Of a stretch of 5,028 nucleotides of DNA, positions 313 through 5,028 are shown in pieces. The first letter of the stretch is position 1, and each line of letters opens with the position of its first letter. Source of the stretch: Zygophlyctis sp. KS116 (lineage: Eukaryota > Fungi > Chytridiomycota); contig BAAFSQ010000509.1 of assembly GCA_054661495.1 (NCBI GenBank), forward strand, positions 1-5,028, read 5' to 3'. The translations under genes were made by a program, and so were the position numbers. The notes under the pieces were generated by a model. The model ran no database searches. It was not told the origin of the DNA and saw nothing but the letters and a program-made list of their open reading frames with translations.

Positions 313-426
313 TATAAATGGTAATGAAGAAGTTAGATAGATTTATTTTTAATTTCCTATCAATCTATGACATCAGTAATGACGTTTAATCCATTGTCCA
401 AATCAGATCACTGAACACTGTCAACA
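313..426 (-). repeat. 3' LTR (114 bp)
   Basis: Base-by-base identical to 4411-4524 (offset 4098). On the minus strand it starts TGTTGACAG immediately after the PPT and ends ...CCATTTATA. Confidence 0.96.
342..347 (-). promoter_or_regulatory. Putative polyadenylation signal AATAAA in the 3' LTR (copy at 4440-4445 in the 5' LTR)
   Basis: AATAAA on the coding strand about 30 nt before the LTR end. The AT-rich context makes a chance match possible. Confidence 0.45.
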
Positions 427-3400
427 CTCCCCTTTCGGTGATATGGCTTAACGTTTAATTGCTTTCTAAACGATTCAATCTTGTGTTTGTTTAGACTTTT
501 CGTTAACACATCAGCAATTTGATCTTCAGTAGAAATGTATTTAAAGACAATATCTCCTTTTTCTTGAAGTTCTCGTAAATACTGGAGTTTGATAATAATA
601 TGTTTTGATTTTGTATTAATTGCATTGTTTCCAACCAATTGGATCAAAGCTTGATTATCACAATGAATAACAGTGGGTTCTTTGACAATGTCTAAAAATT
701 TCATATCAGTTAAAACTTGTCGTATCCATACAACTTCTTTTGCACAATCAGTAGCTGCTATAATTTCAGCTTCAGCTGCAGATGTTGCCATGGTGCTTTG
801 TTTAGAAGAGTTCCATGAAATTGTGTTCTTACCCAAATAAACAATCCACCCAGTTGTTGATTTATAATCTTCATAATTACTTCCATAACTGGCGTCACAA
901 TACGCTTCTAACATGGGATTTTCACAGTGAGAGAATTCTAAACAATGATCTTTAGTTGCATTAAGGTAACTAAAGAGTTTTCCAATGGCTTTTACATGGT
1001 TATCATCAAACTTTGAAGCAAATCGACCCAAAATACCCGTTGCATATGAGATATCAGGTCTCGTATTGATAGAAGCATATAAGGTGCTACCAATGCATTC
1101 TCTGTAGGGAAAATCTATATTTTCTGGTTGATCTGTTTTCTTAAAGATATGACCAGTAATCATAGGAATATTAGAATATGATTTGACTTTGAATTCCTCC
1201 AGTTTATCGCTAATATATTCTGATTGATGGATTTGAATCTTTGTATTATCTGCATTCACAGCAATACCACATCCAAGGATTTTTGTTGGAATACCCAAAT
1301 CTTTAATTTTGAACATCTTATTCATGCCATGAACTGTGTCTCCCCTGAGTTTGACGTCCTGAATTAACAAGAGGAAATCATCCACATGACAAATAATTAA
1401 GGCGAAAAACTCGCGTGAGTGAACAAATAAACCAGGATCAGATGGAGCTTTGTGAAAATTTAGCTTTAACAAACTGGTGACTAAGAGATCATTCCAAAGT
1501 TTCCCTGCCTGTTTCAGACCATAAAGACCTTTGTTAAGTTTAAGAACAGGTACGCCAAGAAGAGAATGAACGGGAACAGGATAACCTTCAGGAATCTTCA
1601 TGTATATCTCTTTGTCCATGGGAGCATTCAAATAAGCAAGGACTGCATCAATCTGATGTAAGCGAATATTGAATAAGACAGAAAGGGCAAAAATAATACG
1701 CCAAGTAGCAATGCGAGCAACAGGTGCATAAGTGTCATCGTAATCGACACCGTGGATTTGTGTATAGCCTTGTGCTACAAGACGGGCCTTATATCTCTCA
1801 ATTTGACCTTGGTTATTAGTCTTGAGATCAAAAACCCAGCGAGATCCAACTGCACGTCTAGATGGAGGTAATGCCATTGGAGGGGAAAATGTACCCATTG
1901 ACTCTAATCCGGCTAGTTCATTTGAGAGGGCGGAGGACCAATTACTATCATCTCCAAAGTTGATCTTATAATCTTTGTAATTCTTTGGAATAGCAAAATT
2001 GGCATATGGGATACGCTTTAAACCTTCAGGGAGAATATTACTAGTACTGATACTAGAATTTATATCTAGAGGAGCAAGTTGTGTCACAGGAATATATTCA
2101 GCATCAAACGCGGGATGATTAGTACCGTCCGTTGAAGCTTCTGAGAGATCAGGATCAGAAGATTGAGCTAAAGATTGATCTTGTACTAGAGAAGTTATAG
2201 AAGAAGTAGGGGCACTAGTGGCCGAATCATCGTCATCTTCAAGATCAATTGAATTGTAATACGGTGTTGTTGTGGATCGTTCAAACGTAACATTGCAGGA
2301 TTCAATTATCTTTCCATGTAGTAGAACTCTATAACCATTATTACAATTCCCAACCAATATCCCTTCTTCACAGACAGGGGATAGTTTACTTCCACGCCTT
2401 GGCTTTGACAATTGTACGTACGCAGGCTGACCAAATTTCTTAATGTACTTTATATTTGGTTTAAAATGATATAACTTTTCGTAAGGAGTGATACCATGGC
2501 TATCAGGCATGCGATTGAGCAAGTATACGGAATGTTTCAGAGCTTCAATTTGTATAGATTTCATTTCTTGCACAGAATTCGGTAAATCCATCAATAAAGC
2601 ACGACAAGTAGTAAAGATAGTTCGGTTTTTACGTTCAGCTGTTCCATTCTGCTGAGGGGTAGCTGTACTTGCTTGTACAAATAATATACCATGTGTTGAG
2701 CAATAAAAACCAATTTTTGTGAATTCCCCACCTTTATCGCATATCAATCTTGTAATGTTAATTTTGAATTGAGTTTTAAAGAAACTTAGTGCATCAATGA
2801 AGAAATTAAACATATCACTCTTCTGCTCTAGTACCTTTAGCAAAGTACTGTTTGACCCTTGGTGAGTTATTACACCTATGGGGGTAGATTGATTCAAAAA
2901 TGTAATATCCATGCAAAAGGTTGATTGCCTAAGGATGTGAGGATCATTAACTGAACCTGTTAATACTGTATTTGTGGATTTTGCCAGAATACAAGATTTG
3001 CAATTTTTGACTTGTTCAATTGATTTAGCATCTTGGCGTGGAGGAAGGCAACCATCAACTGCATTAGGTAATTTTAATAGACGCTCAAGACTTAGATGCC
3101 CAAAATCAATATGTAAATCATAAAGATTTTTGCATGGTTTTGCAGTTACTTGAAGACTAGTAGGGTAGTTAGTTGCAGTATTTAAATTTAAATGAAATAA
3201 TCCATCCTTTAACTGTGCAGTCATAGCATTTTTTTCATTAACTTTAACTGTCATTGAGTTGCTATCTGCTTTAATTACTGCGCCTTTATCGATTAACTTT
3301 GACATTGAAATCAAATTTACAGTAGCAGTAGGAACATAAAGGCAATCATTTAGATTGATTACGTTTCCTGTCTTGGTTTTTAAAGTAATTTGGCCGATTC

Positions 3401-4172
3401 CTTCTGCAGAGGATTGCGTATTGTTGAACCCAGTTATTTGGGTTTTATTTTTCAATATGTCAGTAAATACAGAAATATCATTGATTATATGTTCTGTTGC
3501 TCCTGAATCAAGAAGCCAAGCATCATTAAAAGTTTCAGTCTTAGATGCCATGAAAGTAAACGTGTTTTTGTCTTTTATTGGGACTGATACTTGCTGTTGT
3601 TGTCTCTTCTTTGAAACAGTATTGGCTTTAACTTTATTGGGTTTATACCAAGATGGTCGATTAGCAACATCTGCTCCACCATTAGCCCAGCATTTTGAAG
3701 TATCATGATTTTTACCACAAGTTTTACATTTAACTATTGTAGTTAACCCAAAGCTTTCATTTTTATGTCTCATTTCCCCAGAGATTTCTCGTCTCTGCCA
3801 TTCTTCTTTCAAGCAAGTTTTGAGAGATGTGAGATCGTTTAAGTAACCTTTTTGGGCTCGCAGGGCTTGAATAAATATATTGAATGAGGGAGGAAAAGTT
3901 TTAAGAATGTGGAAGATCAATTCTCCATCAGTGATCGGTGCATTTGAAGACGCAAGCAGTGATTGCAGATGCGCTAGTCTATTGAAATACCCGTTTATAT
4001 CACCACCTTCAGCTAAATTTGTCCGAGAGAAAGCATCGCGGTACATGCCTGTTGATTCTGCTGTTTGAGCTTTATGCAAATTTTCGACTCCATTCCACAA
4101 TTCACTTGCAGTGGTAAACTTGCTTAGTTCAGATTCAAATTTAGGATCAATGAATTTTCCAATGGCGCCCAT
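408..4172 (-). CDS. Copia-type Gag-Pol polyprotein (C-terminal Gag, aspartic protease, integrase, reverse transcriptase, RNase H). The true start is probably ATG 4379, upstream of an in-frame TAG.
   Basis: 1254-aa ORF with UBN2-like Gag (TASELW...LKTFPPSF), CCHC knuckle, WLLDSGATEH protease, H-x4-H...CxxC and D,D,E integrase (DKGGEF, PQQNGTAERKNRT), copia RT motifs (RYKARLVAQGYTQIHGVDY, QIDAVLAYLN, LYGLKQAG, HVDD) and RNase H (YCDAS, SAAEAE, HCDNQ, ADVLTK). Confidence 0.96.
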   Translation of the reverse strand: MGAIGKFIDPKFESELSKFTTASELWNGVENLHKAQTAESTGMYRDAFSRTNLAEGGDINGYFNRLAHLQSLLASSNAPITDGELIFHILKTFPPSFNIFIQALRAQKGYLNDLTSLKTCLKEEWQRREISGEMRHKNESFGLTTIVKCKTCGKNHDTSKCWANGGADVANRPSWYKPNKVKANTVSKKRQQQQVSVPIKDKNTFTFMASKTETFNDAWLLDSGATEHIINDISVFTDILKNKTQITGFNNTQSSAEGIGQITLKTKTGNVINLNDCLYVPTATVNLISMSKLIDKGAVIKADSNSMTVKVNEKNAMTAQLKDGLFHLNLNTATNYPTSLQVTAKPCKNLYDLHIDFGHLSLERLLKLPNAVDGCLPPRQDAKSIEQVKNCKSCILAKSTNTVLTGSVNDPHILRQSTFCMDITFLNQSTPIGVITHQGSNSTLLKVLEQKSDMFNFFIDALSFFKTQFKINITRLICDKGGEFTKIGFYCSTHGILFVQASTATPQQNGTAERKNRTIFTTCRALLMDLPNSVQEMKSIQIEALKHSVYLLNRMPDSHGITPYEKLYHFKPNIKYIKKFGQPAYVQLSKPRRGSKLSPVCEEGILVGNCNNGYRVLLHGKIIESCNVTFERSTTTPYYNSIDLEDDDDSATSAPTSSITSLVQDQSLAQSSDPDLSEASTDGTNHPAFDAEYIPVTQLAPLDINSSISTSNILPEGLKRIPYANFAIPKNYKDYKINFGDDSNWSSALSNELAGLESMGTFSPPMALPPSRRAVGSRWVFDLKTNNQGQIERYKARLVAQGYTQIHGVDYDDTYAPVARIATWRIIFALSVLFNIRLHQIDAVLAYLNAPMDKEIYMKIPEGYPVPVHSLLGVPVLKLNKGLYGLKQAGKLWNDLLVTSLLKLNFHKAPSDPGLFVHSREFFALIICHVDDFLLLIQDVKLRGDTVHGMNKMFKIKDLGIPTKILGCGIAVNADNTKIQIHQSEYISDKLEEFKVKSYSNIPMITGHIFKKTDQPENIDFPYRECIGSTLYASINTRPDISYATGILGRFASKFDDNHVKAIGKLFSYLNATKDHCLEFSHCENPMLEAYCDASYGSNYEDYKSTTGWIVYLGKNTISWNSSKQSTMATSAAEAEIIAATDCAKEVVWIRQVLTDMKFLDIVKEPTVIHCDNQALIQLVGNNAINTKSKHIIIKLQYLRELQEKGDIVFKYISTEDQIADVLTKSLNKHKIESFRKQLNVKPYHRKGSVDSVQ
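427..436 (-). promoter_or_regulatory. Polypurine tract (plus-strand primer)
   Basis: GAAAGGGGAG on the minus strand, immediately 5' of the TG that begins the 3' LTR. Confidence 0.92.
450..915 (-). other. Ty1/copia RNase HI domain (approximate bounds)
   Basis: YCDASY (Asp 894-896), STTG, ISWNSSKQ, SAAEAE, CDNQ, KHI, QIADVLTK. Confidence 0.93.
1170..1940 (-). other. Reverse transcriptase (RVT_2 type, approximate bounds)
   Basis: Catalytic Asp in QIDAVLA (1647-1649) and HVDD (1377-1388). KARLVAQG and LYGLKQ motifs present. Confidence 0.95.
2280..3125 (-). other. Integrase: HHCC zinc-binding domain, DDE core and C-terminal SH3-like part (approximate bounds)
   Basis: HIDFGH (first His 3111-3113) and CKSC (2991-3002). 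Catalytic residues D 2907-2909, D 2736-2738, E 2634-2636. Downstream TPYE, FGQPAY, SKL and GYRV motifs. Confidence 0.9.
3285..3520 (-). other. Aspartic protease domain (approximate bounds)
   Basis: WLLDSGATEHI with catalytic Asp at 3507-3509, plus downstream GIG and LYVP...NLIS motifs. Confidence 0.9.
3690..3728 (-). other. Gag nucleocapsid zinc knuckle, C-x2-C-x3-H-x4-C
   Basis: CKTCGKNHDTSKC followed by WANGG. Confidence 0.85.
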
Positions 4173-4190
4173 AGCTTGTTCATCGACTTC

Positions 4191-4379
4191 CTACCATGCT
4201 TCATTAGCAGCTGGGTCACTTATGGTCTCTTTGCCTTCTTTATTTTCTATAATATGAGGATTAACTGGATCTCTAATTGTTCTCCAAATTTTCTTTGATT
4301 TTAAATGATTCATTGTAGCAAATCGCCAAGCACAATAATTTTCGCCGTTATAAATGATGTATTCTTCTCTGTTAGTCAT
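4191..4379 (-). CDS. N-terminal segment of Gag, in frame with the downstream polyprotein but cut off by a TAG
   Basis: YNGENYCAWRFATMNHLKSKKIW matches the copia Gag N-terminal motif (F/L)xGxNYxxWxxxMxxxLxxxxLW. 4379-4172=207 nt, so the frame is the same, and the junction reads ...NEAW*EVDEQAMGAI. Confidence 0.85.
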   Translation of the reverse strand: MTNREEYIIYNGENYCAWRFATMNHLKSKKIWRTIRDPVNPHIIENKEGKETISDPAANEAW

Positions 4380-4395
4380 ATTCTTCTTTGATTCG

Positions 4396-4410
4396 ATTCG
4401 ACTGTTAATC
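4396..4410 (-). promoter_or_regulatory. Primer-binding site complementary to the anticodon arm of tRNA-Asn(GUU) (half-tRNA primer)
   Basis: Minus strand GATTAACAGTCGAAT abuts the 5' LTR. Its complement ATTCGA-CTGTTAA-TC is a canonical C32-U33-GUU-A37-A38 anticodon loop closed by A31-U39 and G30-C40. Confidence 0.8.
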
Positions 4411-4524
4411 TATAAATGGTAATGAAGAAGTTAGATAGATTTATTTTTAATTTCCTATCAATCTATGACATCAGTAATGACGTTTAATCCATTGTCCAAA
4501 TCAGATCACTGAACACTGTCAACA
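4411..4524 (-). repeat. 5' LTR (114 bp)
   Basis: Identical to 313-426. On the minus strand it reads TGTTGACAG...CCATTTATA and is followed directly by the PBS GATTAACAGTCGAAT. Confidence 0.96.
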
Positions 4525-4525
4525 A

Positions 4526-5028
4526 AAACAGGGACTTGGTCATTATACAATATATTGTGTTGGAAGATATCGGTATTTTGTCTTTTTATGCTTTCTTATA
4601 GTAAATCCAACCTATTAAAAACAACAGTTTTATATTTTATCACCTCTGGACTCTTTTGTAAAAATTGGACGGGCGGCCGTCCAAACAGGGACTTGGTCAT
4701 TATACAATATATTGTGTTGGAAGATAACTGTATTTAGTTTTATTAAGGTTTTTAATAGTAAATCCAACCTATTAAAAACAACAGTTTTATATTTTATCAC
4801 CTCTGGACTCTTTTGTAAAAATTGGACGGGCGGCCGTCCAAACAGGGACTTGGTCATTATACAATATATTGTGTTGGAAGATAACTGTATTTAGTTTTAT
4901 TAAGGTTTTTAATAGTAAATCCAACCTATTAAAAACAACAGTTTTATATTTTATCACCTCTGGACTCTTTTGTAAAAATTGGACGGGCGGCCGTCCAAAC
5001 AGGGACTTGGTCATTATACAATATATTG
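4526..5028. repeat. 157-bp tandem repeat (satellite), at least 3.2 copies, truncated by the window end
   Basis: AAACAGGGACTTGGTCATT recurs at 4526, 4683, 4840 and 4997 (period 157). Units 2 and 3 are identical, and unit 1 differs by 9 substitutions. Confidence 0.97.

What the first reader, a model, noticed from the sequence alone, without database searches (positions are those of the whole stretch)
4396..4410. Copia element apparently primed by a 5' half-molecule of tRNA-Asn(GUU)
Seen: the sequence right after the 5' LTR is GATTAACAGTCGAAT, with no TGG, so it cannot pair with a tRNA 3' CCA end. Its complement reads as tRNA positions ~26-40: A-TTCGA-CTGTTAA-TC. This gives a canonical 7-nt loop with the GUU (Asn) anticodon and self-consistent A31-U39 and G30-C40 pairs. 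Established: Drosophila copia and yeast Ty5 prime from a tRNA-iMet cleaved in the anticodon arm (PBS GG-TT-ATG-...), and Candida Tca2 uses an internal part of tRNA-Arg(UCU). This PBS (GA-TT-AAC-AGTCG) has the same register but the anticodon complement is AAC. Inference: this lineage uses a tRNA-Asn fragment ending at position 40 as primer. I do not recall tRNA-Asn half-molecule priming being described, but I cannot search the literature. CCA-based PBS finders would miss it.
Basis: partly seen in the sequence, partly recalled or inferred. Interest (0 to 1): 0.85.

Follow-up and report, generated by a model that had tools for sequence, protein, structure and literature searches.

The report
Copia retrotransposon primed by tRNA-Asn half
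A jumping gene of the copia type in a freshwater fungus-like microbe starts copying itself from a cut piece of the host's asparagine tRNA instead of a whole tRNA; the sequence evidence is strong, but it is one more member of an already known trick.

Summary
The window holds a 4.2-kb Ty1/copia element on the minus strand.

- **Structure:** it has identical 114-nt LTRs and a polypurine tract. One gag-pol frame carries a single in-frame stop.
- **tRNA match:** the 14 nt directly after the 5' LTR (4397-4410) are exactly complementary to positions 27-40 of the host's three tRNA-Asn(GTT) genes. These positions cover the 5' strand of the anticodon stem, the loop, and U39-C40.
- **Genome-wide count:** the same 14-mer occurs 18 times, in the 3 tRNA genes and at 15 retroelement sites. 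At least 11 sites lie 2.3-3.4 kb upstream of copia RTs only 29-40% identical to this one (plus two fragments of its own clade).
- **Sharp edges:** complementarity never extends to G41 and rarely to G26.
- **Other lineages here:** they use Lys(CUU), Ile(IAU) and iMet halves in the same 27-40 register.
- **Outside relatives:** seven of eight sampled carry the classic iMet-half site.

Priming by a 5' tRNA-Asn fragment ending at C40 is therefore well supported by comparison, though no RNA data exist.

Novelty is modest. Half-tRNA priming defines hemivirus-type copia elements. Halves of Arg, Ile, Lys and Tyr tRNAs are published, and Kojima 2024 briefly names tRNA-Asn-GTT for fungal TRIMs. A first-stage note (s1-560809) had already flagged this site on other DNA of this genome.

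The parts
4411..4524 (-). 5' LTR, 114 nt. It starts TGTTGACAG and ends ...CCATTTATA.
   Evidence: It is identical to 313-426. In one search the joint 4410->313 has 114 letters that fit on both sides, and one X3 contig carries a different flank before 4411.
4397..4410 (-). Primer binding site GATTAACAGTCGAA, complementary to host tRNA-Asn(GTT) positions 27-40. There is no spacer after the LTR.
   Evidence: Searches show the 14/14 match. Searches show the 18 genomic copies (3 tRNA genes plus 15 element sites). No variant letters appear at these positions in four metagenome runs.
4380..4396 (-). 17-nt leader between the PBS and the gag ATG.
   Evidence: This stretch is not conserved among sister copies.
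408..4379 (-). gag-protease-integrase-RT(-RNase H) frame. It starts at ATG 4379-4377, has one in-frame stop at 4191-4193, and is then open for 1254 codons from ATG 4172. It ends inside the 3' LTR.
   Evidence: Pfam finds Retrotran_gag_2, Pol_BBD, SH3_retrovirus and RVT_2 in that order.
427..436 (-). Polypurine tract GAAAGGGGAG, directly upstream of the 3' LTR.
313..426 (-). 3' LTR, 114 nt.
   Evidence: In one search, contigs of X2 and X4 leave the window at 312, so bases 311-312 are flank, not LTR.

Best explanation
This is a Ty1/copia LTR retrotransposon of the half-tRNA-primed (hemivirus-like) type. Its minus-strand primer is a 5' fragment of the host's tRNA-Asn(GUU).

Shown:
- The element has two LTRs, a PBS, a gag-pol frame and a PPT.
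- The 14 nt directly after U5 are exactly complementary to tRNA-Asn positions 27-40.
- This site keeps sharp edges in many diverged copia elements of the same genome.
- Outside retroelements, only the tRNA-Asn genes carry the complementary sequence.

Inferred, by analogy with Drosophila copia and Ty5:
1. The tRNA is cut between C40 and G41, in the 3' strand of the anticodon stem.
2. The anticodon stem opens and nucleotides 27-40 pair with the PBS.
3. Reverse transcriptase extends from the 3'-OH of C40 through U5-R (under 114 nt) to make minus-strand strong-stop DNA.
4. Later, plus-strand strong-stop synthesis copies the primer back from C40 to U27 and stops at G26, presumably because it is m2,2G. 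This would explain why the site is exactly 14 nt. It would also explain how the site is refreshed from the tRNA at every cycle, and how a lineage can switch primer after one mis-priming event.
For: - The 14/14 match to three host tRNA-Asn(GTT) genes.
- The PBS abuts the LTR end, as defined by LTR identity and by independent contig breakpoints.
- The 14-mer is found 18 times in the 12.7-Mb genome: 3 tRNA genes and 15 element sites.
- Eleven of those sites lie 2.3-3.4 kb upstream, on the same strand, of copia RT matches. Apart from the window's own and a fragment of its clade, these RTs are 29-39% identical to the window RT.
- Around the motif the LTR ends and leaders are unrelated. The base before it is never C (so no pairing to G41). 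The base after it is mostly A (so no pairing to G26).
- Three diverged sister copies, whose LTRs are 75-81% identical, keep the site unchanged.
- The C293 element shows the clean case: LTR...CA followed by the PBS at the 5' LTR, and LTR...CA followed by flank at the 3' LTR.
- Other copia lineages here have Lys(CUU), Ile(IAU, with C opposite inosine 34) and iMet sites in the same 27-40 register.
- PBS type follows RT clades. The window sits in a clade with 100/97 support in which every member with a known site is Asn-type.
- The predicted primer-PBS duplex energy is -22.8 kcal/mol.
Against: - There is no direct evidence. No RNA or small-RNA run holds this organism, so neither the 5' half ending at C40 nor primer-linked cDNA has been seen.
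- tRNA-Asn normally carries t6A37, and often queuosine 34, inside the paired stretch (general knowledge). These should weaken pairing, although iMet, the proven copia primer, also has t6A37.
- The nuclease is unknown.
- This copy has no target-site duplication (GTTTT versus CAATA). Its LTR ends in TA, not CA, and gag carries an in-frame stop. This particular copy is therefore probably not autonomous.
Confidence: 0.85

Rival explanations
1. The site does pair with tRNA-Asn, but no free half-molecule exists. Instead the whole tRNA (or a precursor) anneals through its anticodon arm and is nicked in place at the edge of the duplex, by the element's RNase H or a host nuclease. That nick creates the 3'-OH at C40.
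For: The cut falls at exactly the same place (40/41) for four different tRNAs, Asn, Lys, Ile and iMet, whose stems differ. That fits a cut defined by the duplex edge or by tRNA architecture rather than by sequence.
Against: For Drosophila copia, a 39-nt tRNA-iMet fragment was reported as the primer (from memory: Kikuchi et al. 1986). Nothing here distinguishes the two routes.
Confidence: 0.25
2. The motif is conserved because it is a target or decoy for tRNA-derived small RNAs, or because it acts as a packaging or dimerisation signal. The real primer would be something else.
For: tRNA fragments that target PBS sequences are known for 3' fragments in mammals (PMC12853362).
Against: No other candidate PBS exists between the LTR and the gag ATG, which is only 31 nt. 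The site abuts U5 exactly where priming must start. The sharp 27-40 window fits templating from the primer.
Confidence: 0.04
3. Self-priming of the Tf1 type: the 5' end of the transcript folds back onto the site.
For: None specific.
Against: The longest stretch of the LTR complementary to the PBS region is 7 nt, and 417 of 2000 shuffles reach that length. LTRs of the 15 elements are unrelated while the site is identical.
Confidence: 0.01
4. The match is a chance resemblance, or a relic of an insertion next to a tRNA gene.
For: None.
Against: Chance expectation is about 1e-5. The match stops at 14 nt rather than continuing into the tRNA body. It recurs in 15 elements at the same distance from the LTR.
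Confidence: 0.01

Closest known systems
Drosophila copia, yeast Ty5 and other hemivirus-type Ty1/copia elements (tRNA-iMet half primer)
   Same: The PBS directly follows the 5' LTR, has no TGG, and is complementary to tRNA positions 27-40. The gag-PR-INT-RT order is the same. Seven of eight sampled nearest outside relatives of this element carry the iMet-half site GGTTATG(A/G)GCC.
   Different: The tRNA species is Asn(GUU), not initiator Met. The LTR is very short (114 nt) and ends in TA.
Rust-fungus Copia families and Helenus TRIMs (Kojima 2024, PMC10886601)
   Same: [quoted passage not shown] The paper lists Tyr, Ile, Asp and iMet. [quoted passage not shown]
   Different: That report concerns Pucciniales and is bioinformatic. 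For Asn it covers only non-autonomous TRIMs and gives no details in the text; the text says Asp in one place and Asn-GTT in another. Here the Asn site is in autonomous elements of several RT lineages, matched to the host's own tRNA genes.
FunCo1 Copia clade of filamentous ascomycetes (Donnart 2017, PMC5445492)
   Same: Its PBS ATTAAGAGTCT matches an internal region of tRNA-Lys. This is the same site as the Lys(CUU) type found here in a sister lineage, which differs from the Asn site at 3 of 14 positions.
   Different: The tRNA is different. No relation to this element was tested.
[quoted passage not shown]
   Same: Both show half-tRNA priming by a non-initiator tRNA. The Ile type with C opposite position 34 also occurs in this genome.
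   Different: The tRNAs and the hosts are different.
Yeast Ty4 (from memory: PBS complementary to the 3' end of tRNA-Asn)
   Same: It is a copia-type element using the same tRNA species.
   Different: Ty4 would use the CCA 3' end of the whole tRNA. Here the anticodon arm is used. I could not confirm the Ty4 statement in the held literature.

Membership tests
LTR retrotransposon | Two direct long terminal repeats flanking the coding region | tested here: met
   The LTRs at 313-426 and 4411-4524 are 114/114 identical.
LTR retrotransposon | Polypurine tract directly upstream of the 3' LTR | tested here: met
   GAAAGGGGAG at 427-436 on the minus strand.
LTR retrotransposon | Target-site duplication (5 bp for copia) and TG...CA termini | tested here: not met
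   The flanks are GTTTT and CAATA. The LTR starts with TG but ends in TA. An outside relative (L130) also ends ...AATA and has a confirmed 5-bp duplication, so the TA end is tolerated. The missing duplication suggests rearrangement of this copy.
Ty1/copia (Pseudoviridae) | Copia-type gag, and integrase placed before reverse transcriptase (RVT_2) | tested here: met
   Pfam finds Retrotran_gag_2 at residues 7-129, Pol_BBD at 219-297, SH3_retrovirus (integrase C-terminus) at 569-634 and RVT_2 at 767-998. The rve core itself did not reach E 0.001 here but is present in homologues.
Hemivirus-type (half-tRNA-primed) copia | PBS next to the 5' LTR, complementary to the anticodon stem-loop of a tRNA rather than to its CCA end | tested here: met
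   A 14/14 match to host tRNA-Asn positions 27-40, with no TGG.
Hemivirus-type (half-tRNA-primed) copia | The primer is initiator tRNA-Met | tested here: not met
   The anticodon complement is AAC (Asn), not CAT's complement. iMet-type sites exist in other elements.
Hemivirus-type (half-tRNA-primed) copia | A cleaved tRNA fragment physically primes minus-strand DNA | not testable with these tools
   No RNA or raw-read run of this organism is available. Only assembled contigs could be laid on the window.

The most novel reading that the evidence does not exclude
All four half-tRNA primer types in this one genome (iMet, Ile-IAU, Lys-CUU, Asn-GUU) decode ANN codons, as does the published Arg-UCU case. 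They should therefore carry t6A37 and G26, and all are used in the identical 27-40 register. The most novel reading is that the still-unknown step making half-tRNA primers recognises the t6A-type anticodon loop and cuts at 40/41. On this reading the 5' edge of the site is set by an m2,2G26 stop, and primer switching is confined to this tRNA class. This genome, with four primer types side by side, would then be a natural system for finding that nuclease. The rival view is that the pattern only reflects mutational closeness of these anticodon arms. The published Tyr case, and perhaps Asp, in rust fungi argue against a strict rule.
Probability: 0.15. Interest if true: 0.6.

Novelty: new member of a known kind. 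Interest (0 to 1): 0.35.

Why it matters
This gives a clean, well-controlled example of a copia lineage that has swapped the classic iMet half-primer for a tRNA-Asn half. The host's own tRNA genes are in hand for comparison.

A single small genome holds four half-tRNA primer types in exactly the same register. That sharpens two old questions:
- How is the half-tRNA primer cut? This has been unknown since 1986.
- How do retroelements change primers?

There is also a practical point. PBS finders that look only for CCA-end complementarity will miss most copia elements in this genome.

Tried and rejected
- ARAGORN finds no tRNA gene in the window.
- My first guess at a symmetric stem (CTGTTAATCGAA) hit only a non-tRNA site. 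The real 3' stem strand is TCGAG.
- I considered that the last two LTR bases overlap the PBS, because the 5' copy reads GA and the 3' copy reads CA. Contigs of other samples break at 312/313, so that CA is flank. Hypothesis rejected.
- Self-priming is rejected.
- The 8-nt match GAATCGAA to the T-arm of several tRNAs, just after the PBS, is absent from sister copies. I treat it as chance.
- The C118 sister copy has no 3' LTR within 5.6 kb, so it is truncated.
Consequently:
  - The RTs of the second Asn group (C495, C152, C293, C518, C573) could not be placed on the tree.
  - Most 3' LTRs were not inspected.
  - The host iMet gene was not read.
- The tRNA list is partial: 63 of 1120 candidates were scored.
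- No RNA run holds the element, so expression, R boundaries and tRNA halves could not be examined.
- Literature searches did not retrieve the Ty4/tRNA-Asn statement. The supplements of PMC10886601 hold no text on Asn.

Full report
**What is in the window**

The element lies on the minus strand. Two identical 114-nt repeats sit at 313-426 and 4411-4524. Read on the element strand, they start TGTTGACAG and end CCATTTATA. A polypurine tract GAAAGGGGAG (427-436) abuts the 3' copy.

A gag-pol frame starts at ATG 4379-4377. It has one in-frame stop at 4191-4193 and is then open for 1254 codons. Pfam finds copia-type gag, Pol_BBD, the integrase SH3-like domain and RVT_2 in that order, which is the Ty1/copia layout.

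Contigs from four freshwater metagenomes fix the LTR limits independently. A joint has exactly 114 letters that fit both sides. Contigs of X2 and X4 leave the window at 312, and one of X3 enters the LTR at 4411 from another flank. The bases at 311-312 are therefore flank. The LTR ends in TA, and the primer binding site follows with no spacer. This copy has no target-site duplication.

**The observation**

The 14 nt after the LTR (4397-4410, GATTAACAGTCGAA on the element strand) contain no TGG. The host assembly is 12.7 Mb in 1175 contigs, and the window is contig C509. It has three tRNA-Asn(GTT) genes with identical anticodon arms, TTCGA-CTGTTAA-TCGAG.

The site is complementary at 14 of 14 to canonical positions 27-40. 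Those positions cover the 5' strand of the stem, the seven-base loop with anticodon GUU, and U39-C40. Position 4396 faces G26 and could only wobble.

Among 53 host tRNA sequences with CCA added, the next-best match is 8 nt. The chance of such a match at a fixed place is about 1e-5. The LTR has no meaningful complement to the site: the longest is 7 nt, reached by 417 of 2000 shuffles. Tf1-like self-priming is therefore out.

**Conservation**

The 14-mer occurs 18 times in the genome: in the three tRNA genes and at 15 other sites. At those 15 sites it follows unrelated LTR ends and is followed by unrelated short leaders, usually with a gag ATG soon after.

Eleven sites lie 2.3-3.4 kb upstream, on the same strand, of copia RT matches. 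These include the window's own RT and a fragment of its clade. The rest are 29-39% identical to it.

- The base before the motif is A or G, never the C that would pair with G41.
- The base after it is A in most cases, so pairing stops at position 27.
- Three sister copies with LTRs only 75-81% identical keep the motif unchanged.
- In the C293 element the 5' LTR ends ...CA followed by the motif, and the 3' LTR ends ...CA followed by flank.
- In four metagenome runs the LTR varies (4414, 4434, 4444) but 4397-4410 does not.

**Context in the same genome**

Other copia lineages carry sites in the same register.

| Site | tRNA (positions 27-40) | Where found |
|---|---|---|
| GATTAAGAGTCTCA | Lys(CUU) | 14 element sites plus the 2 tRNA genes |
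| CGTTATCAGCACCA | Ile(AAU), with C opposite position 34 (expected for inosine) | 22 element sites; the tRNA genes have T there |
| GGTTATGGGCCC | iMet type | 4 hits |

On an RT tree of 29 sequences, site type follows clades. The window sits in a clade with 100/97 support (C509, C654, C660, C516, C289) in which every member with a known site is Asn-type. A Lys clade has 100/100 support. Ile types form several groups. One Asn element (C563) lies apart on a long branch.

The nearest proteins outside this genome are only about 30% identical. Of eight whose contigs I read, seven carry the iMet-half site right after the LTR, three of them with boundaries confirmed by target-site duplications. One has a full tRNA-Met 3'-end site. 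The Asn site therefore looks derived from the common iMet-half state.

**Mechanism**

Shown: the anatomy, the exact complementarity, its sharp edges, and its recurrence.

Inferred from the copia/Ty5 model:
1. tRNA-Asn is cut between C40 and G41.
2. The stem opens and nucleotides 27-40 pair with the site. The predicted duplex energy is -22.8 kcal/mol.
3. RT extends from C40 through U5-R.

My own further inference is that the 14-nt length reflects plus-strand copying of the primer from C40 back to U27, with a stop at a modified G26. Copying the site from the primer at each cycle would explain two things: exact matches in old, diverged elements, and one-step primer switching. The Asn and Lys sites differ at only 3 of 14 positions.

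Whether the half exists free or the tRNA is nicked after annealing cannot be told here.

**Comparison with the literature**

- Half-tRNA priming is the hallmark of hemivirus-type copia elements (PMC1181622, PMC8515867).
- Plant surveys report 1/2 tRNA-Met and inosine-edited 1/2 tRNA-Ile (PMC6317226).
- Candida elements use internal regions of tRNA-Arg(UCU) and iMet (PMC4139406).
- The FunCo1 clade uses an internal tRNA-Lys site (PMC5445492).
- Kojima 2024 (PMC10886601) reports anticodon-loop sites for Tyr, Ile, Asp and iMet in rust-fungus Copia and Helenus TRIMs. One sentence states that tRNA-Asn-GTT was chosen once in fungal Helenus. The text is inconsistent between Asp and Asn, and the supplements held no text on it.

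I found no other description of a tRNA-Asn half primer. This is therefore a new and well-documented member of a known kind, not a new mechanism.

**Earlier notes of this scan**

First-stage notes on other pieces of this genome had flagged the Asn site (s1-560809), the Ile site (s1-559237, s1-553145, s1-560795) and an iMet site (s1-553136). I reached the same sites through my own searches before reading those notes.

That the organism is a freshwater chytrid comes only from such notes. I did not test it. The runs that hold the element are freshwater, lake, river and estuary metagenomes.

**Limits**

- No RNA data exist.
- The tRNA list is partial.

Noticed in passing
window 4526-5028: A tandem satellite with a 157-bp period and at least three copies about 95% alike abuts the 5' LTR. 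It has very high contig depth in all four metagenome runs.
   Followed up: no
L126 about 175-189; L127 (reverse) about 240; 14 element sites genome-wide: A sister copia lineage carries GATTAAGAGTCTCA right after its LTR. This is complementary to host tRNA-Lys(CTT) positions 27-40, a Lys(CUU) half-tRNA site like that published for FunCo1.
   Followed up: partly
L123, L124, L125 (contigs C520, C566, C571); 22 element sites genome-wide: Copia elements with CGTTATCAGCACCA after ...CA. This is complementary to tRNA-Ile(AAT) positions 27-40, with C opposite position 34 as expected for inosine. The tRNA genes have T at that place. Two further sites have the T version.
   Followed up: partly
window 4191-4193: An in-frame stop codon interrupts gag in this copy. 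Contigs from all four other samples are polymorphic at this codon.
   Followed up: partly
window 312/313 and 4410/4411: Contigs of X2 and X4 continue from 312 into other DNA, suggesting an allele or locus without the element. A contig of X3 has another flank before the LTR. Together these suggest insertion polymorphism between lake populations.
   Followed up: no
window joint 4410 -> 313 (run X2): One 578-nt contig reads the pol end, PPT, a single LTR, the PBS and gag. This could be an assembly path through the repeat, tandem elements sharing an LTR, or a one-LTR circle.
   Followed up: no
window 313-315; L130: The LTR ends in TA rather than the usual CA. An unrelated metagenomic relative (L130) also ends ...AATA, with a confirmed 5-bp duplication GAATA.
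   Followed up: partly
genome-wide: All four half-tRNA primer types here (iMet, Ile, Lys, Asn) read ANN codons. They would therefore be t6A37 tRNAs with G26, and all are used in the 27-40 register.
   Followed up: no
L005/L006 (contig C172, about 8086-8410): A tight cluster of AT-rich tRNA genes (Trp, Pro, Asp) plus an 86-nt gene that ARAGORN labels Pyl(cta). It is probably organellar, and the Pyl label is probably a mis-call.
   Followed up: no
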